In this document: piece by piece, positions 8,261 through 61,094 of the stretch
How positions within the stretch are numbered: position 1 is the first letter of the stretch
Layout: every line of letters begins with the position of its first letter
NCBI RefSeq assembly: GCF_032191835.1
Contig: NC_083240.1
Span: 21,700,001-21,764,000 of the forward strand
DNA length: 64,000 nt
Reading direction: 5' to 3'
Source: Heteronotia binoei
Taxonomy: Eukaryota
Made by a program: the position numbers and the translations under genes
The notes under the pieces: model-generated
What the model saw: the letters and a program-made list of their open reading frames with translations, nothing else
Database searches by the model: none
Told to the model about the DNA's origin: nothing

Positions 8261-10297
8261 CTGGAAGAGAAACATGAAACACAGCCAAAACTGGAGTGCG
8301 CCCTGGAAGCACAGCCTGTGCCACAGGTTTTCAATGTACCGTAAGTGTTTACATCCTCAGAATCAGGTGAAAACAGCCCTATTTCAGTGCCAGTTATGAT
8401 TCAGTGCATTAATCCAGAATAAACTGTAGCAAGCGAGAACTGTGCAAACATGCCCTTGAGTTTTTGTTCTTCCAGCGCCTAAAAGGACGAGCAGGCTACT
8501 AACAATGCTGTGGGCTAAGGAACTTTTCTGTACCAACCTGCAAGGCTGCATCAGTCAACATCTAGATTCTGAAAGGGAGCCTCTGTTCTGCTGCCCACTG
8601 TTTACAACTCTGAGGCCGCTTTCAACATGATATCCGTGGCATGGAAGCTCCACGAGGCCTGGCTCTCAGCCACCCTGTCAGAGGTAATGCCTGACAGCAG
8701 CGAGGGCAGCTCTGGCACTGGAAGGAGCTGCAACAAAGACTCCCACATGGTCTGAGGCTTCCGACATTACCACATTGCTGTGGGTGGCTCTTTCCCACAC
8801 CGCTGAGATCATGCTGGAATAACTTAGTTTGGCTGATCTCTCAAGAAACTGGACATCAGCATCCAACAACATGAATCCCCATGAAGGGACTTGCCTTATA
8901 CGTTTCTTGAATACATTAATGTCAAGAGTCACTCCATCTTGTTCCTCGTCATGTGTATTCAATGCTAGGCTGTGCTTCAATGCTATGCTGCGCTTGCAAT
9001 GCCTTTGACATAACTGTAACTTGTTACTTATCTGGAGGGATGGCATGTCTGGGAGTTAGCTAGTTGCTAGGTAACCAAGGGCAAGAGCTGGAGGAGATGT
9101 GAACCATGAACTGATAGAAAGCACCTGTGGTGATGAGAGCTTTGCAAAAACCCCACTTTTGCTTGGTGCGTTTTGGCTTGAATTATAATGGTCAGGGCAA
9201 AGATTTATAAGTTGGGGGAACTGACTGGACTTCCGGGGTTGGAAAATGCCGAGCTGAACTGCTTCTCAGAAGGGGAGCAGGTTGGAGCTTCTGTTCGGAG
9301 TAGTGGAAGGCCATCTAATGCCTACTTTTCTCAGTCAGAGATCAGTCCAAGATATGCACAGGAAACTTTGAGGAGATTTACCTTGTCTAAAAGGGAGTCC
9401 CCGGGTGGGGGGGCTCCTTTGAGGCTTTGAGTGATCTCGAGAGACGAGTTGCATTTTCATCATCTGCAGAAGTTTCCAGAGTCATTTATTTGACATAAGC
9501 TCGACAGGATCCTAATCTTCTTTGATACTGCTAAACATCTAAAGCTATACAAGACTGGTGTTGATCTGGATAACTACAGAAAAGGTACAGATTGCTATCT
9601 TTCATTCCGGGACTAATTAAAGTTAAACAAAATAAAATCAGAAGGTGGGAAATTGAAATCTAGAAAGCTTGGAAGAAGAAGGGGAGAAGGGGTGAAATTT
9701 GGACTTCATAAATTTAAAGGACAGTGCTAAAAAGTGGAAAGGAATTTATTGTTTTGTCTGCTTGTGGTTTTGAAGAAAAAGCCCCATCGTCATAGACTTG
9801 CAGCTCCCACAGCCGACACAGGAAATACATCAAGTATCGTGAGATCCCTCTACTAGCGAAAACGGGATTTGATGGAAAGCAAAGCAGGAAGTATCGGATG
9901 GAAAAGGGAAATCATTAAAGCAGCCAGCCTACTCTAGGACTATAATATCATAGAAAAACATTGGCGGCCATTGCTAGGAGGTTAAAAATTAAATAAAATT
10001 TTTAAAGTGTTCGGGATATTAAAAATTGTTGGAGCCGACAGAGGTGACGATTATAAGGTAAATACTATTGGACATTACTGTTAATAACCATTTTAGAAGC
10101 CTCTAGAAGAAAAAGGAAATGAGGCAGAAAGTTGCGACCACCATTTTGGAAAAAATGAAAACTTTAAAAATTAATATCTGAGCCCAGGAGGCTCTGAGGA
10201 CAGTGAAATTAGGCTTATTGAAAAGAGCAAGCCTCACTCTTTTAAATCTGATAGCTGAAATTTAATTTGGTGAGGTCAACATTTTCGGTGTTTTTAC

Positions 10298-11036
10298 ATG
10301 TCAGACCATAAGCAAACCCGAGCAAGGACTGCTTCACTGGAGAAAATGCAGGACCAATTAGATGCAATGGAAGCCAGGATAATGAAAGGGATGAAGGAGA
10401 TAACTGCTTCCAAAAAAGAAATTAGAAAAGATATTGAAGAGCTAAAAAAAGATAGAGGATCTCAGAAATGAGACTGTGGTGACATCAAAAAGGTGGAAGG
10501 GAAGAGTGAAAGTACATGATTCCACCTTGTTAAAAATACAAGAAAAAGTGGCAATTCATGACTGCAAACTGATGGAGACCCAGATACGTCTGAGAGGAGT
10601 ACCTGAGGATAAAGAAACTGATTTGAAAGAATATATAATAAAAATAATTGCAGAATTTTTGGAGGAAGATCCTGAAGGGACTAGAAACATGTATGACTAT
10701 ATGTATAGAATGAACTCACTATATGCCAAAAAAAATAATCTACCAAGAGATGTGGTTATAAGATATATGACAAAAGAAATGGTGGGAAAGATCATGAATA
10801 AAAACTTTGAAAAGACATTGATAGTGGGAGGCAGCAGAGTAAGAATTATGAAGGAATTGCCAAGACAAGTGATAAATGACAGAAGAGCATATAAGACATT
10901 GATAGAAAAATTACTGGACAATGAAATGAGGTATAGATGGATAATACCTGAAGGTTTGAGCTTTGAGCTACAAGGAAAAAGGATTACAATTACAAGCACA
11001 CAGGAACTGCGTGGATTTTATGAAGAACATAAATAA
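10298..11036 (+). pseudogene. L1 ORF1 (coiled coil plus RRM; frameshifted)
   Basis: ATG at 10298; LRGVPE and LPRDVVIR motifs typical of L1 ORF1p. Confidence 0.8.
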
Positions 11037-11044
11037 TTTGCACC

Positions 11045-14000
11045 ATGATGGATTACAAATTATTATCTTGGAATGTAAATGGACTAAATTCACCACAAAA
11101 AAGAAAGGCAACATTTCATTGGATTAAAAAGCAAAATTGTAATATAGTTTGTTTACAAGAAGTACATATCAAACAAAAGGATTGCAAATTTTTATGGAAT
11201 AAACAATTGGGACTAGAATTTCATTCATTGGCTGAACAGAAGAAAAGGGGAGTGATTTTTTATATTAAACAAGAATTGGACCCGAAATTAGTGTTTAAAG
11301 ATAAAGATGGAAGATTTGTAGCAGTAGAAATATTAAATGCAAAAAAAACATTGTTACTGGGACTATATGCACCAAATGGAGAAAAGGATGCTTTTTTAAA
11401 AGACATTATACAACAATTTGATGAAGTGACATATGGTCAAGTTTTGATAATGGGGGACTTTAATGGAACAATTAAGAACACACTGGATAGATCTGGGGGG
11501 GGGAGGGAATAATAAGGAAGGAAAATTGCCAAAGTGTTTTTTTGAATTGGTCAAACAAGAAAATTTGGAGGATATATGGAGGAAATTTAATCCTGAAGTG
11601 CAGGACTACACCTTTTATTCAGCAAGACATAAAACTTTTTCCAGAATTGACATGTTGTGGTGCACTAAAGACTTAGGCCTTATAACAAAGAAAATAGAGA
11701 TTTTACCTAAAATAGGGGCTGATCATAACCCAATAATGTGGATTACAAAATTGTCTAAAAAGTTGAGAAGATGGAGATTGAATGAAGATTTACTACAGAA
11801 TAAAGAAATGACATCTCTAGAAAATGAAACTAAAGCTTTCTTCCAAATAAATGATAAAGATATAGAATTTCAGACGGTGTGGGATGCTTATAAAGCAGTA
11901 ATGAGAGGAATATTGATTATATTGAATAATAAAGACAAGAGGGCAAAAGAAAAACATGCTGGACATTCAAAATGAAATAAAGAAAAAAGAAGGGGAACTT
12001 AGAAAAAGGCCAGGGAAAAAGAAAATTATGAGGGAGATTATAATATTACAAAACACAAATGAGACATTTGTTAAATAAAGAACTGGAATGGAATCTGAAA
12101 AGACTGCAGCAGAAATCTTTCGAGGGAGCAATTAAACCTGGAAAATATTTGGCCTGGCAATTGAAGAAAAAGAGAGAAAGTAAAATTATTAATAAAATTG
12201 TGGTGGAGGGAAGAGAGGTGGTAGATCAAGAAGGAATAAAAAGAGAATTCTTTAAGTATTATGCCAAATTATTTAAGGGTGTTAAAATAAAAAAAAGAAA
12301 AGATGGAAGAGTATTTACAAAAGATTAAAATAGCACCCTTAACAGAAAATATGGGGAAAGTCTTGAATGATCCAATTGAAAAAACAGAAATTGAAGCAGC
12401 AATTAATGCAATGGAAAATGGAAAAGCACCTGGGCCAGATGGATATACAGCTAAATTTTTTAAAATCTTCAAAGAGGAGTTAATTCCAAAACTTCAGAAA
12501 TTGATGAACATGATAAGAATAAAAGGGGAAATACCAAATACCTGGAAGGAAGCTGTTATTTCGTTGATTCCAAAGGAAAATAGAGATGTCACGAATGTAA
12601 AAAATTATAGACCAATCTCACTATTAAATAATGACTATAAAATATATACAAGAATCTTGGCAAAACGGCTTAAACAATATTTGATAAATTTTGTAAAGGA
12701 AGATCAAGCGGGGTTTCTCCCCAAAAGGCAAATAAGAGACAATATTAGAACTGTTGTAAATATTGTAGAATATTATGAAAGACATTCAGAAAAGGAAGTA
12801 GCATTATTCTTTGCGGATGCAGAGAAAGCATTTGATAATTTAAATTGGGACTTTATGTTTGCAGTAATGGAGAAAATGGAGTTGGGGGAAAACTATAAGG
12901 ATGATAAAAGCAATATATACTGAACAACGTGCAAGGTTATGTATAAATGCAGATCTTACAGAAGACATGATAATTAGCAAAGGTACAAGACAAGGCTGTC
13001 CGCTTTCCCTACTGTTGTTTATAATGACTCTTGAAATCTTACTGATGCAAATCCAAGAAGATAAAGCAATAGAAGGATTAAAAGTAAAAGGATTTACTTA
13101 CAAATAAGTTTGTAATGATATATCATTTGCAGATGATATAATGTTTATAAATGAAAATCCTATACAAGTCACACCTTTGTTGTTAGCTAAAATACAAGAA
13201 TATGGGGAATTGGCGGGACTGTGTATTAATAAAGAAAAATCAAAACTTCTATGTAAAAATATGCAAGTAAGCAAACAAAAGGAACTGCAGAAGATAACGG
13301 GATGTGAAGTTACCTCTAAGGTAAAATATTTGGGTGTGGAGATAACAATGAATATTGACTTGTTTAAAAACAATTATGAGAAGCTATGGCATAAAATGGA
13401 TGAAGATATGATAAAATGGAATAAACTTAATTTGTCATTGCTTGGCAGAATAGCTGCAATTAAGATGAATATTTTGCCAAGAATAATGTATTTGTTTCAA
13501 ACTATTTCGAATCTGAAAGACAGTAAACAATTTAATAAATGGCAAAGGAAAATTTCAGAGTTTGTGTGGACTGGGAAGAAACCAAGGATCAAAATGAAAA
13601 TCTTAACAGATGCAAAAGAGAAAGGAGAATTCCAATTACCAGATTTAAAATTATATAATGAAGCAGTTTGTCTAGTGTGGATAAAAGAATGGGTGACGCT
13701 GTTAAACAAAAAACTTTTAGCGTTGGAAGGTCATGGAAATAAATTTGGCTAGCACGCTTATATGTACTATGGGAAAAAAAGATGGATGTTTTTTCTCTCA
13801 CCATTATATATGAAATAATTTGCTAAATGCTTGGATGAAATGTAAGAAGTATGGGGATGAGAGAAAACCGTTATGGATAGTGCCAGCAGAAGTAATAAAA
13901 ATAACAGCTGAGACGGGTGAAGAAAAGTGGTTGTCATACAATCAACTATTAAAAATGCAAAGTGGCAAAATAGAATTGAAAACTGCTGAAGAGTTGAATA

Positions 14001-16357: not shown

Positions 16358-16649
16358 CCATTGCCAGCAACTCCTGCCCTGGGGAACTCTGGCTGAATAC
16401 ACAGCAGTTTGTGCCCAGAATGTGGGGGGTGGAGGTCTCCTTGGGCCCTGCACAGCTCCATGTCCTCTGTCCCATTCACCAGGGTCTTGCATTTGAGGGG
16501 CCCTTTGCCTTTCGTATGCAAGCCTGCGGAGCTACAGGTATACTCTGGGGAAAGCTGAGGCATGTCTTTGAAGTTTTCTGCACTGATCTGAATGACGTGA
16601 GTAGGTGAAAACAGCCGGATGATGTCGATCAGAAGCAGCAGTCCAGCAC
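16358..16649 (-). CDS. NOL9: NOL9 exon 8 (GAGLLLLIDIIRLFSPTHVIQ...)
   Basis: 292 bp, phase 1 to phase 2; orthologous peptide; donor GG|gtaagt. Confidence 0.93.
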
Positions 16650-16655
16650 CTTTGA

Positions 16656-16944
16656 AGAAGACGATGACACTGGAATTATATTCCGCCCTCCACTCAAGAG
16701 TCTCAGAGTGGCTCACAATCTCCTTTATCTTCCTCCCCCACAACAGACACCCTGTGAGGTGGGCAAGGCTGAGAGGACTCTCACAGCAGCTGCCTTTTCA
16801 AGGACAACCTCTGCTAAAGCTATGGCTAACCGAAGGCCATTCCAGCAGGTGCAAGTGGAGGAGTGGGGAATCAAACCCGGTTCTCCCATGTAAGAGTCTA
16901 CACACTTAACCACTACACCAAACTGGCTCACTACATCAAGCTGG
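16656..16944 (-). mobile_element. Squam3-like SINE, full length, inserted at the NOL9 exon 8 acceptor
   Basis: tRNA-like head GCCAGTTTGGTGTAGTGG (duplicated), CORE-like body, CTT tail; 6-bp TSD tcaaag. Confidence 0.85.
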
Positions 16945-18508
16945 CTTTGACCACGGGGGAAGAAATAAGGACAGGTGTTGGGCTACTCTGGCTGACAAGG
17001 ATGGAATCCGGTATCTCATACAGAAGTGGGCAACCTGAGAATGTCTGCATTCCCCCACAAAACAAGGACAGTTCTCACCTCTGCAGATGCAGGAAATAGT
17101 TTGTAAACAAACAAGCAATGTTATTTTGAAAAACCTATTCTGATTTCACTAGTTGTGGGGAAAGGATGCACATACATAACTGTACAGAGCACCAAAGCTC
17201 CAACCACAGAAACCTTATCTTCCCACTGCTATGAGTTCGAAGTTTCTAACATGCCGAAGTGCAGATATAGACTAGAAGCATTCCCTTTAAAGATTAAAGT
17301 TAAAATTCTCAAGAAACTGGATTATGTATCGTTTCTGCACTTCTGCAGAACTGCAGCCCGGGGTGAGAGTGCTCCATATGTATCTCCTTCTACCAAAATC
17401 ACCATCTTGAATTTTCCACCTGCAATTCCTATCTAAAAAGGTCAGTGCTGGTTCTCCAGGCCAATGTGCAAGACAGGATGATGGACTAGAAGGACCACTG
17501 GTCTAATGCAGCAAGGCACCTATTATATTCTGTGAAAATAGGAAACTTGGAACCAAAGTATGCAAATACAACGAATGGACTAAGACTTTTCCTCATTGCT
17601 TTCAATGTATCTTTCTTTATCTTCTCATCCAGATGTTTCCAAAATAAGAAGCAAAGGAAAGGAATGGTTTAGCTTCGACATGAGAATTTCAACTTTCATT
17701 TTCTTTTTCAAGACATGATTTTTCTAGCCTTCTGGGTTGCAAAGACAGGTTCCGGCCTATGTCTTCAAATCTAGTGAAATCTTCCAAAGGGAGGGTGAAG
17801 AAGCACAGGGCCCTACATTGCTCAAATATATAAGAACCAAACTATGCTACATAGGATTGCCAGGTGTCCCCCCACCCCCACCACTGGCAGGGGATGGGGT
17901 GGCCGGAAGGGGGGGTAGGGTTGCCAGTTACAGATTAACTGTACTTATCTGTGCAAATTAACTGTACTTATCTAAATAAATGTATTGCAAAGGTGTTTGA
18001 GTAATTTTAATTAATGAAGTGCTATAATATAATTGTGCTTTTGTCCATTATTTTTCAACTTATGCACAATCAAATATCACAATAATATACAGGATGCCCT
18101 CTTACAGCAACTTTGCAAGCTCCAGGAGGTGATCTTCAGTGAAGCTGGATTTATATGGATTTTATATTTTGTATTTATGCCATCCATATGGACATGAATA
18201 TGATTATGTAAACAGTAAAGGACTCCGCATCTATATATTTTTTCGAGTTGAGTTTGGCTTTGGAATTGCATGATTACCTATTATTGTGATATTTGATATG
18301 CTCATAATTTGAAAATAACTGGCCAAAAACACAAGATTATATTATAGCACTTTATTCAAACGTCTTCATAATATATTTATTTGGATAACAGTTAATTTGT
18401 CCATGGCATTTTTTGCATTAGTTTACAGGTGAGCTATAGGGCAAAACTCCCCTTCTGAAGAAAAGTGTTCGCCCACTCCCAGTACATTTCCTGGACCAAC
18501 AAGCTTAC

Positions 18509-18670
18509 CTTTCACCCATCCCATGGTGTTGATGACCAAAGGCACATCTCTCTCATAGGCACTGAACACATACTTCAATGTGTCAAGATATCTTTCAGTC
18601 TCCTGTTCGCAACTAGTGTCACCAAAGTATGCCATTTTGTGGGGTGTACGCGGGTGAGTGAATGGTGGAC
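18509..18670 (-). CDS. NOL9: NOL9 exon 7 (GPPFTHPRTP...PLVINTMGWVK)
   Basis: 162 bp; conserved NTMGW motif of Clp1-family kinases. Confidence 0.96.
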
Positions 18671-22852: not shown

Positions 22853-22943
22853 AAGAAGAAGACGACTGCAGATTTATACCCCATCCTTCTCTCTGAATCA
22901 GAGAGCAGCTTATAATCGCCTATACCTTCTCCCCCCACAACAG
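22853..22943 (-). mobile_element. Squam3-like SINE 3' fragment
   Basis: Tail plus 3' body only. Confidence 0.65.
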
Positions 22944-23513
22944 GCAAGGCAAGGGCCACAACAGGCAAGGGAGATCAGATGGAGGAGACAGTCCCACGAG
23001 AACGCTGACCCTAAACCACTTGGGAGTTTTACAGGTTAGCACTACTGCCTTGGGTTAGATGTGGAAGCAAACTAGCAAGCAGTGCATGTCAGCTTTGCAC
23101 AGCATGTGCTTGTGTTAAATAAGGCTAATTGCCAAATGGCAGATATAAACAAACAGCAGCAGGAATATGAAGTTCTGGCATAAAGTTAAGACAACATAAA
23201 GAAGGCCAATAAATCCAGGGAAGGCAGCACCAGTCGAACCCAACAGGTAGTTTGACAGCTTTCAAGTAGTAACGAAGCCTCAACTAAAATCAAGAAGATT
23301 TTCAACCATCATAAGAAACACCAGGGCATAAAAGGGCTTGATTTTGCTGAAATACACAGAACTCATATTCTGAAGGGAAATACGTTAAACAGAAATAATA
23401 CTTTGTCCAGACCGTTGTTGCTTTGCCTCAATATAACCAAGGCTGCCTGCAATCGGTTTTCACCTTCCAGTAATTGCCATAGCGTAAACAACCAGGGAGA
23501 AGATGGAACTCAC

Positions 23514-44232: not shown

Positions 44233-44285
44233 TGGTGGTGGTGGTGGTGGTGGTGGTGGTGGTGGTGGTGGTGGTGATGGTGGTG
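44233..44285 (+). repeat. (TGG)14 TGA (TGG)2 microsatellite in ZBTB48 intron 1
   Basis: Read directly from the sequence. Confidence 0.95.
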
Positions 44286-60887: not shown

Positions 60888-61094
60888 GAACACATGATGC
60901 TACCTGATACTGAATCAGACTGTCGGTCTGTCAAGGTCAGTGCTGACTACCCAGAATGGCGGCAGCTTTCCAGAATCTCAGGCAGAGGTCTTTCATTTCA
61001 CCTATTACCTGGTCCTTTTTAACCGGAAATCCTGAGAATTGAACCTGGGACCTTCTGCCTGCCAAGTAGAGGCTCTGAGCCATTATCCTGCCCC
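60888..61094 (-). mobile_element. tRNA-derived SINE
   Basis: Antisense of the family at 30262. Confidence 0.7.

What the first reader, a model, noticed from the sequence alone, without database searches (positions are those of the whole stretch)
16650..16970. A SINE inserted into the NOL9 exon 8 splice acceptor, duplicated the AG and now supplies the pyrimidine tract
Seen (minus strand): ccttatttcttcccccgtgg-TCAAAG-[Squam3-like SINE with an 18-bp duplicated head ... gtgtcatcgtcttct]-TCAAAG|exon 8. The 6-bp TSD (16945-16950 and 16650-16655) is the acceptor itself. The ancestral tract plus AG is stranded 295 nt upstream, and using it would frameshift the mRNA (295 mod 3 = 1). Inference: the insertion was tolerated in an essential rRNA-processing gene because the CTT tail rebuilt the acceptor, leaving a built-in poison splice choice. 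Two more cases of this geometry occur among the 28 acceptors in the window, suggesting a general route by which microsatellite-tailed retroposons capture 3' splice sites.
Basis: partly seen in the sequence, partly recalled or inferred. Interest (0 to 1): 0.72.

Follow-up and report, generated by a model that had tools for sequence, protein, structure and literature searches.

The report
SINE sits on NOL9 splice acceptor
In Bynoe's gecko a short jumping element landed in the last six bases of an intron of the essential gene NOL9, so the next exon must now be spliced with signals carried by the element, while the old signals sit intact 295 bases upstream; three other geckos still have the uninterrupted site.

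Summary
The window is Heteronotia binoei. Its annotated NOL9 protein (XP_060115306.1) matches the 12 minus-strand exons at 100%, and exon 8 starts at 16649. A 289-nt Squam3B SINE (16656-16944) lies between two TCAAAG copies. Gekko japonicus, Paroedura picta, Eublepharis macularius and a bird lack the SINE. Their intron-7 ends align with the sequence upstream of the SINE in Heteronotia. So this is a lineage-specific insertion 4-6 nt from the acceptor AG. The ancestral branch-point candidate, pyrimidine tract and an AG are stranded intact 295 nt upstream, and using them gives a stop after four codons.

One caveat: the upstream AG could be the SINE's own nucleotides 4-5 rather than target-site duplication.

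A second Squam3B copy abuts the NOL9 exon 3 acceptor and is also absent from the three geckos.

Splice usage ("poison choice") and selection ("tolerated because...") remain inference, because no transcript data were reachable. Insertion junctions suggest a second cause: the (CTT)n tail primes at CT-rich targets, which makes pyrimidine tracts preferred landing sites.

The scan has noted similar cases on other DNA of this genome (EIF4A1, REEP4, RBMX2, MORF4L1).

Verdict: a new member of a known kind, of moderate interest.

The parts
18509..18670 (-). NOL9 exon 7 (162 nt); donor GT at 18508-18507; contributes the first base of the split Gly codon
16650..18508 (-). NOL9 intron 7 (1859 nt), which contains the SINE at its 3' end
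   Evidence: orthologous introns are 1908 nt (Gekko), 991 nt (Eublepharis), 172 nt (Paroedura) and 196 nt (hoatzin)
16951..16970 (-). Stranded ancestral 3' splice region: branch-point candidate cttAt (A at 16966) and pyrimidine tract tttcttccccc, followed by gtgg
   Evidence: conserved in Gekko, Paroedura and Eublepharis directly upstream of their exon 8
16945..16950 (-). Upstream TCAAAG copy. Its AG (16946-16945) is the stranded acceptor. TCAA is certain target-site duplication; the AG is either duplication or SINE nucleotides 4-5
16656..16944 (-). Squam3B (3B3-like) SINE, sense to NOL9, 289 nt: tRNA-like head with an 18-nt tandem duplication, CORE remnant, L2-derived 3' region and a short degenerate (CTT)n tail
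16911..16946 (-). Two 18-nt head units (16946-16929 and 16928-16911), 16 of 18 identical
16752..16753 (-). SINE-internal AG (cacAG|GG, 12 of 16 pyrimidines upstream). An exon starting at 16751 would add 102 nt in frame (34 residues, no stop)
16656..16682 (-). SINE 3' end, now the functional 3' splice region of exon 8: branch-point candidates at 16676 (tatAAt, -26) and 16665 (gtcAtc, -15), and pyrimidine tract tcatcgtcttct
   Evidence: inference from position. The branch points are not mapped
16650..16655 (-). Downstream TCAAAG copy; its AG (16651-16650) is the acceptor used in the annotated mRNA
16358..16649 (-). NOL9 exon 8 (292 nt, phase 1), residues 385-481 of XP_060115306.1
23645..23902 (-). 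Second case: an older Squam3B copy whose CTT tail runs into the NOL9 exon 3 acceptor (AG at 23643-23642, exon 3 = 23641-23514). There are 5 nt of filler (agcaa, 23907-23903) at its 5' junction and no target-site duplication

Best explanation
After the Heteronotia lineage split from Gekko and Paroedura, a Squam3B SINE retrotransposed in sense orientation into NOL9 intron 7, between ...cccccgtgg and tcaaag|exon 8. This made a 4-6 bp target-site duplication. Shown: the insertion, its position, its absence in relatives, and that the annotated mRNA uses the downstream AG at 16651-16650. Inferred: because only 6 nt of original intron remain in front of exon 8, productive splicing must now use a pyrimidine tract, and almost certainly a branch point, supplied by the SINE's 3' end (tataat...ccag, then tcatcgtcttct). 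The new site is probably favoured because it sits next to the 292-nt exon and its donor (exon definition). The stranded ancestral site would define a 587-nt exon. That ancestral site keeps its branch-point candidate, pyrimidine tract and an AG. Any use of it gives a stop after four codons and a transcript expected to be degraded by NMD. How often that happens is unknown. The landing site was probably not random. In all four sense-oriented Squam3B copies in this gene the tail-side junction lies at a short CT-rich target motif. That pattern is what priming of reverse transcription by the (CUU)n RNA tail on the complementary strand would give. This would make acceptor pyrimidine tracts preferred targets and explain the sense orientation. 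The pyrimidine tail then keeps the acceptor usable, so such insertions survive.
For: The gene and exon boundaries are established by these results. The PDB NOL9 match to exon 8 has E = 2e-12. P0092 (XP_060115306.1, Heteronotia binoei) is 100% identical to all window exons and contains GWVKGAGLLLL. Turtle and axolotl proteins have the same junction. Empty sites: Gekko reads ...ttcttcccctgtgctgaaag|GTGCTGGACTG, Paroedura ...ttttttcccccgtgcttcgtag|GTGCCGGG, and Eublepharis ...ttttccccctttgttccaag|GTGCTGGATTG. A 160-nt alignment joins the Heteronotia upstream flank to these intron ends. Bird contigs have the same boundary with a 196-nt intron. SINE identity: the published Squam3B head motif matches with 1 mismatch at 16905-16931. 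The L2-region motif matches with 0 mismatches at 16736-16761, where none is expected by chance (consensus from the PMC7983390 supplement). The (CTT)n tail and a length of about 270 nt fit the gecko 3B3 subfamily. The copy differs by about 8% from a small local consensus, so it is not a fresh insertion. Second case: the exon 3 acceptor, also empty in all three geckos. Two of the 4 sense copies in NOL9 abut one of its 11 acceptors. The binomial p is about 3.5e-4, or about 0.02 after allowing for how the window was chosen. CT-rich tail-side junctions are seen for e8, e3, c22946 and c7390. The frameshift and stop are shown.
Against: No transcript evidence was reachable. The protein cluster has one member and one contig, the genome itself, so the annotated junction may rest partly on homology. 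Branch points are guesses from weak motifs. The stranded 3' splice site looks at least as strong as the new one (an 11-nt pure pyrimidine run against 8 nt), so it could dominate, leaving the gene to run on a minority of correct transcripts. [quoted passage not shown] The microhomology argument rests on four junctions in one gene. From the family's density, a rough genome-wide estimate (Squam3 at about 1 copy per 10 kb, my arithmetic) predicts a few such cases per 50 Mb by chance alone. Enrichment is therefore not established beyond this gene.
Confidence: 0.8

Rival explanations
1. The stranded ancestral acceptor is used at an appreciable rate. NOL9 output in this gecko is then set or regulated by a built-in unproductive splice choice coupled to NMD.
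For: The branch-point candidate cttAt, the pyrimidine tract and an AG at the ancestral spacing are all intact and as conserved as in Gekko. Using that AG gives a stop after 4 codons, far upstream of the last exon junction.
Against: There are no transcript data. Only one protein isoform is annotated. The resulting 587-nt exon would be poorly defined. Intactness over about 8% divergence is expected even without selection. Nothing indicates regulation rather than noise.
Confidence: 0.35
2. The SINE-internal acceptor cacAG|GG (exon start 16751) is used. It would add 34 SINE-encoded residues in frame between the P-loop domain exon and exon 8, as a major or minor isoform (exonization).
For: The extension is in frame and open (102 nt) and has 12 of 16 pyrimidines upstream. 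The motif is the conserved CORE/L2 junction CCTCACAG|GGT of this SINE family.
Against: The annotated protein lacks the insert and aligns without a gap to other geckos, turtle and axolotl across the junction. The insert would sit inside a conserved stretch (GWVKG-AGLLLLID).
Confidence: 0.15
3. The geometry is chance. Squam3B copies are so dense in this genome that a few land next to acceptors at random, with no insertion preference and no special tolerance.
For: The window holds about nine copies in 64 kb. At that density a few cases per 50 Mb are expected by chance (my arithmetic). Gekko, Paroedura and Eublepharis NOL9 have sense copies but none within 100 nt of an acceptor.
Against: Two of four sense copies in one gene lie within 14 nt of an acceptor (p about 3.5e-4, or about 0.02 conditioned). 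All four tail junctions are CT-rich. In mammals this zone is depleted of SINEs (PMC3088655).
Confidence: 0.25
4. The insertion is a polymorphic or haplotype-specific allele, or an assembly error, sheltered by an intact allele. It says nothing about tolerance in an essential gene.
For: Only one assembly (GCA_032191835.1) was seen. From my own knowledge, Heteronotia binoei includes hybrid parthenogenetic lineages in which bad alleles can be sheltered.
Against: The copy is about 8% diverged from a local consensus, and its two head units differ at 2 of 18 positions, which suggests age. A second, more diverged copy (about 22%) sits at the exon 3 acceptor of the same gene. The coding sequence is intact throughout.
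Confidence: 0.07

Closest known systems
Merle allele of dog PMEL/SILV (SINEC_Cf at the intron 10/exon 11 boundary; PMC6091007)
   Same: A SINE sits exactly at an intron-exon boundary. Its tail forms a pyrimidine-rich tract and sets up a competition between two acceptors. The outcome depends on which AG is chosen.
   Different: Merle is antisense, its tract is oligo(dT) from the poly(A) tail, and the element is L1-mobilised. It is a recent, phenotypically visible, unstable allele, and the SINE-borne site is the aberrant one. Here the SINE is sense and L2-type with a (CTT)n tail. It is old, lies in an essential gene, and its tail serves the correct acceptor, while the ancestral site is the aberrant one. 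Splicing was measured for merle but not here.
TE 'hazardous zones' near splice acceptors, and mutagenic Alu insertions (PMC3088655)
   Same: The insertion lies within 20 bp of a splice acceptor, the class that paper calls very likely harmful. SINEs are depleted within 100 bp of exons in human and mouse.
   Different: Those cases are disease alleles or depleted classes. This copy, and the one at exon 3, persist in a reference genome with an intact essential gene.
Squam3B SINE family of squamates (PMC7983390)
   Same: The head, CORE remnant, L2-derived 3' region, (CTT)n tail and a length of about 270 nt match the gecko 3B3 subfamily.
   Different: This copy carries an 18-nt tandem duplication in the head and a clear short target-site duplication, which the paper says is rare for the family.
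Insertion signature of RTE-related SINEs: the duplication starts with T about 10 nt downstream of a T stretch and correlates with the tail microsatellite (PMC6007223)
   Same: Here the duplication starts with T (TCAAAG) and lies 4-15 nt downstream of tttcttccccc. Its first bases (TC) continue the CTT tail.
   Different: That signature was described for RTE-clade partners, whereas Squam3 is assigned to an L2 partner. The resemblance is a lead, not a test.
Squam3 SINE on the EIF4A1 exon 5 acceptor in the same genome (scan note s1-321143)
   Same: Same genome, same SINE family and same geometry: the ancestral acceptor is stranded upstream and a relative has the empty site.
   Different: A different gene. 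There the SINE later expanded into a repeat array. I did not check it.

Membership tests
NOL9 / Grc3 polynucleotide 5'-kinase gene | Protein similarity to NOL9 across the exon in question | tested here: met
   Exon 8 matches human NOL9 chains in the PDB with E = 2e-12, residues 415-503. The window exons are 100% identical to XP_060115306.1, NOL9 of Heteronotia binoei.
NOL9 / Grc3 polynucleotide 5'-kinase gene | Domain set: N-terminal cupin, CLP1_P P-loop kinase domain and NOL9 C-terminal domain | tested here: met
   Precomputed Pfam hits PF24419, PF16575 and PF25467 on P0092 and its orthologues. The P-loop GPKSVGKST is in exon 5. Exon 8 alone gives no Pfam hit.
Squam3B SINE | tRNA-derived head GAGAGCCAGTKTGGTGTAGTGGTTAAG | tested here: met
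   1 mismatch at 16905-16931; 0 matches expected by chance.
Squam3B SINE | CORE remnant and L2-derived 3' region (CACCTCACAGRGTGT..TGTTGTGGGG ... GGGATAT.AAATCCA) | tested here: met
   0 mismatches at 16736-16761. The rest was compared by eye with the consensus in the paper's supplement.
Squam3B SINE | (CTT)n tail | tested here: met
   The tail is short and degenerate here (tcatcgtcttct). It is clear in sister copies in the window.
Squam3B SINE | Target-site duplications are rare in the family | tested here: inconclusive
   This copy has a 4-6 bp duplication, proven by empty sites. Other window copies show none. Rarity is not an exclusion criterion.
Retroposon insertion (as opposed to deletion in relatives) | An orthologous empty site in outgroups, with the flanks contiguous | tested here: met
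   Gekko, Paroedura, Eublepharis and birds.
Unproductive splicing coupled to NMD ('poison' splice choice) | The alternative site introduces a premature stop more than 50-55 nt upstream of the last exon junction | tested here: met
   +295 nt, with a stop after 4 codons in exon 8 of 12.
Unproductive splicing coupled to NMD ('poison' splice choice) | The alternative junction is actually used, and its transcript is stabilised when NMD is blocked | not testable with these tools
   No RNA-seq or transcript contigs for this species were reachable.
Merle-type SINE at an intron-exon boundary | The SINE tail creates the pyrimidine tract of a competing acceptor | tested here: met
   Positions -7 to -20 before exon 8 are SINE tail; 13 of 16 bases at -5 to -20 are pyrimidines.
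Merle-type SINE at an intron-exon boundary | Antisense orientation with an oligo(dT) tract from a poly(A) tail; the SINE-borne acceptor is aberrant | tested here: not met
   The SINE is in sense orientation with a (CTT)n tail, and the SINE-served acceptor is the productive one.

The most novel reading that the evidence does not exclude
Squam3B SINEs (through their L2-type partner) preferentially integrate into the polypyrimidine tracts of 3' splice sites, because the (CUU)n RNA tail primes on the complementary AAG-rich strand. Their 3' end (a TATAAAT-like branch-point mimic, then a CTT tract) works as a portable 3' splice-site module. In geckos, constitutive acceptors of essential genes are therefore repeatedly taken over by SINEs, leaving the ancestral sites as upstream decoys.
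Probability: 0.3. Interest if true: 0.65.

Novelty: new member of a known kind. Interest (0 to 1): 0.47.

Why it matters
Insertions within 20 nt of a splice acceptor are the class of transposon insertion most often linked to disease, and they are depleted in mammalian genomes. Here one sits 6 nt from the acceptor of a constitutive exon in an essential ribosome-biogenesis gene, and a second sits at another acceptor of the same gene. Both are old enough to have diverged, and both have the pre-insertion state preserved in three relatives. That makes a clean natural experiment on 3' splice-site choice: an intact ancestral site competes with a transposon-supplied site 295 nt downstream. If the pattern holds genome-wide, it would point to an integration preference of microsatellite-tailed retroposons for pyrimidine tracts. 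It would also show a way for introns to swap their 3' splice signals without loss of function.

Tried and rejected
- Pfam on exon 8 alone gave only a sub-threshold VQ hit. The gene was identified from the PDB search and the annotated protein instead.
- The word search with exon 8 found only two bird fragments, so the big representative search was used to reach squamate orthologues.
- The Sphaerodactylus protein P0004 has no contig on record.
- P0012 (702 aa) is probably the human protein. It was not fetched, and no contig taken for human was saved or compared. The PDB comparison was a sequence search only.
The nearest repeats end 85-150 nt from those acceptors, so no third case was found.
- No convincing target-site duplications were found for other Squam3B copies.
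- Transcript evidence was not found. The NOL9 cluster holds one sequence on one contig, and the only assembled-transcript hit, P0110, is 51% identical and not a gecko.
- RNA folding of the insert gave z = -0.97, not significant. The stranded pyrimidine tract is predicted to pair with the SINE's GGGGGAGGAA block (P = 0.98). The new tract is predicted to be equally paired, so this does not discriminate between the sites.
- I did not compute MaxEnt-type splice scores because no model is on hand, and I did not align the SINE to the full typed consensus.
- The spliced NOL9 model was searched exon by exon by reference. The joined sequence was never built for a search.

Full report
**What is there.** On the minus strand the window reads ...ccttatttcttcccccgtgg TCAAAG [289 nt] TCAAAG | GTGCTGGACTGCTG.... 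The first 36 nt after the upstream TCAA are two 18-nt units that are 16/18 identical. The open frame from 16647 encodes AGLLLLIDIIRLFSPTHVIQ.... It matches human NOL9 chains in the PDB with E = 2e-12, from the first residues of the exon onward.

**Which genome and which exon.** A word search with exon 8 found only two short bird ORFs. The representative search then gave a turtle NOL9, which I used as the query to retrieve squamate orthologues.
- The Heteronotia binoei protein P0092 (XP_060115306.1) matches the window at 100% in 12 exon blocks on the minus strand. The window is therefore Heteronotia binoei (assembly GCA_032191835.1).
- The exon in question is exon 8 of 12 (16649-16358, phase 1). 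Exon 7 is 18670-18509 and ends GTGAAAG|gtaagc.
- P0092 reads GWVKG|AGLLLL across the junction. Turtle and axolotl proteins read GWVKG|VGLLLL and GWVRG|FGLMLL.
- I searched exon by exon by reference.
- P0012 is probably the human protein. It was not fetched, and no human contig was used.

**The decisive test: relatives without the SINE.** I fetched the genomic NOL9 loci of Gekko japonicus (L004), Paroedura picta (L005) and Eublepharis macularius (L006).
- In all three, exon 8 is preceded directly by a normal acceptor...ttcttcccctgtgctgaaag|GTGCTGGACTG (Gekko)...ttttttcccccgtgcttcgtag|GTGCCGGG (Paroedura) and ...ttttccccctttgttccaag|GTGCTGGATTG (Eublepharis).
- The 160 nt upstream of the SINE in Heteronotia (16951-17110) align with these intron ends, and closely with Gekko.
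- Two bird contigs found in metagenomes have the same boundary (...ctccctaaag|GTGAGGG) with a 196-nt intron. One of them is hoatzin host DNA, 100% identical to hoatzin NOL9.
- The element is therefore an insertion in the Heteronotia lineage. The flank upstream of it is the ancestral 3' splice region, and the hexamer occurs once in the empty state and twice in the filled state.
- The stranded region keeps a cttAt branch-point candidate 21 nt before its AG and an 11-nt pyrimidine run. Both are shared with the three geckos.

**What the element is.** Eight other stretches of the window are related to it.
- The consensus sequences in the supplement of the Squam3 paper (PMC7983390) identify it as Squam3B.
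- The published head motif matches at 16905-16931 with one mismatch. The L2-region motif matches at 16736-16761 with none. No match is expected by chance for either.
- Its length without the head duplication (about 270 nt) and its CTT tail fit the gecko subfamily 3B3.
- Because the consensus starts GAGAGCCAG, the upstream AG may be SINE nucleotides 4-5 and not part of the duplication. The duplication is thus 4-6 bp. The outcome is the same either way: an AG at the ancestral distance from the stranded tract.
- The paper says the family rarely makes target-site duplications. Other copies here show none, but the empty sites make this one certain.
- The copy is about 8% from a small local consensus, so it is not a fresh insertion.

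**Consequences for splicing.** These are inferred, not measured.
- Only 6 nt of original intron remain before exon 8. Positions -7 to -20 are SINE tail, and 13 of 16 bases at -5 to -20 are pyrimidines.
- The only plausible branch sites within 40 nt are in the SINE: 16665 (gtcAtc) and 16676 (tatAAt). The latter lies just before a ccAG that is too close to it to be used.
- A list of all AGs shows three relevant choices:
  - 16649 is productive.
  - 16944 adds 295 nt and reads Ala-Ser-Leu-Met-stop, a predicted NMD substrate.
  - 16751 follows the family's conserved cacAG|GG. It adds 102 nt in frame with no stop, which would insert 34 residues.
- The annotation carries only the productive form, and the cluster has a single member.
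- Folding gives no help. The insert is not unusually structured (z = -0.97). The stranded tract is predicted to pair with the SINE's GGGGGAGGAA block, but the new tract is predicted to be paired just as much.

**Is it a pattern?**
- A second Squam3B copy (23902 to about 23645, roughly 22% diverged) runs its CTT tail into the NOL9 exon 3 acceptor (...ccagtctcttcttcttcctttccag|CTGCAAG).
- Gekko, Paroedura and Eublepharis have ...catccattgtctttctttccag|CTGCAAG or close variants, without the SINE. This is again a lineage-specific insertion, here within the pyrimidine tract itself, with 5 nt of filler and no duplication.
- NOL9 holds four sense-oriented copies, and two of them abut one of its 11 acceptors. 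With about 165 such positions in about 21.7 kb of intron, p is about 3.5e-4. Once one allows that the window was picked for the first case, p is about 0.02.
- The other two sense copies (c7390 and c22946) are also absent in Gekko. Their tail-side junctions lie at ctcc/cttg-type motifs of the target.
- All four junctions therefore fit priming of reverse transcription by the (CUU)n tail on a complementary AAG-rich strand. That would favour pyrimidine tracts as targets and give the sense orientation automatically.
- A related signature has been described for RTE-related SINEs: duplications that start with T about 10 nt after a T stretch and correlate with the tail repeat (PMC6007223). The partner clade differs, so this is a lead only.
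- The NOL9 genes of the three other geckos have sense copies, but none lies closer than about 100 nt to an acceptor.
- The scan's notebook lists further unchecked cases in this genome: EIF4A1 (followed up, same geometry), MORF4L1, REEP4 and RBMX2.
- From the family's density, a few cases per 50 Mb would arise by chance. Genome-wide enrichment is therefore open.

**Comparison with what is known.**
- The nearest described case is the dog Merle allele. There a SINE at the PMEL intron 10/exon 11 boundary forms a pyrimidine tract and a competing acceptor (PMC6091007). Orientation, tail type, age and which site is the good one all differ from the case here.
- Mammalian surveys find SINEs depleted within 100 bp of exons and call insertions within 20 bp of an acceptor very likely harmful (PMC3088655). 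Against that background, two retained copies in one essential gene are unusual, but they are not a new kind of thing.

**Verdict.** It is a new member of a known kind, of moderate interest.

Noticed in passing
window 16752-16753 (-): The SINE's conserved cacAG|GG would give an in-frame, stop-free 102-nt extension of exon 8 (34 residues). This is a ready exonization site between two conserved NOL9 segments.
   Followed up: partly
window 16955-16963 and 16731-16739 (-): The stranded pyrimidine tract (cuucccc...) is complementary to the SINE's purine block GGGGGAGGAA. The predicted pairing probability is 0.98 in a 600-nt context. This could mask the old tract, but the new tract is predicted to be paired as well.
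   Followed up: partly
L005:3030-3165 (Paroedura picta, NOL9 intron 2): A 136-nt palindromic, MITE-like insert flanked by a 10-bp direct repeat (ggtttatggc) lies about 33 nt upstream of the exon 3 acceptor. It is absent in Gekko, Eublepharis and Heteronotia. It is another lineage-specific insertion close to the same acceptor.
   Followed up: no
window 10000-14000: An AT-rich block (GC 0.32-0.33) with strong positive GC and AT skew lies inside the 8.1-kb NOL9 intron 8. It has long antisense open frames of low complexity and is probably a LINE remnant.
   Followed up: no
intron 7 of NOL9 in L001, L004, L005, L006 and the window: Intron 7 ranges from 172 nt (Paroedura) and 196 nt (hoatzin) to 991 nt (Eublepharis), 1859 nt (Heteronotia) and 1908 nt (Gekko). 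The last 100 nt or so stay alignable among the geckos.
   Followed up: partly
window 44233-44285 (+): A (TGG)17-18 repeat sits just upstream of the ZBTB48 BTB-domain exon. It reads as a poly-Val or poly-His run depending on strand and frame.
   Followed up: no
window 60891-61069 (-): A different tRNA-derived SINE (head ggctcagagcctct..., tail catgtgttcatgtg) ends about 150 nt upstream of the last KLHL21 exon. It has several copies in the window and in the gecko loci.
   Followed up: no
window 22853-22975 (-): A strongly 5'-truncated Squam3B copy lies here. Its 5' junction repeats 15 nt of target-like sequence (ccttgcctgttgtgg), which suggests microhomology-mediated 5' joining.
   Followed up: partly
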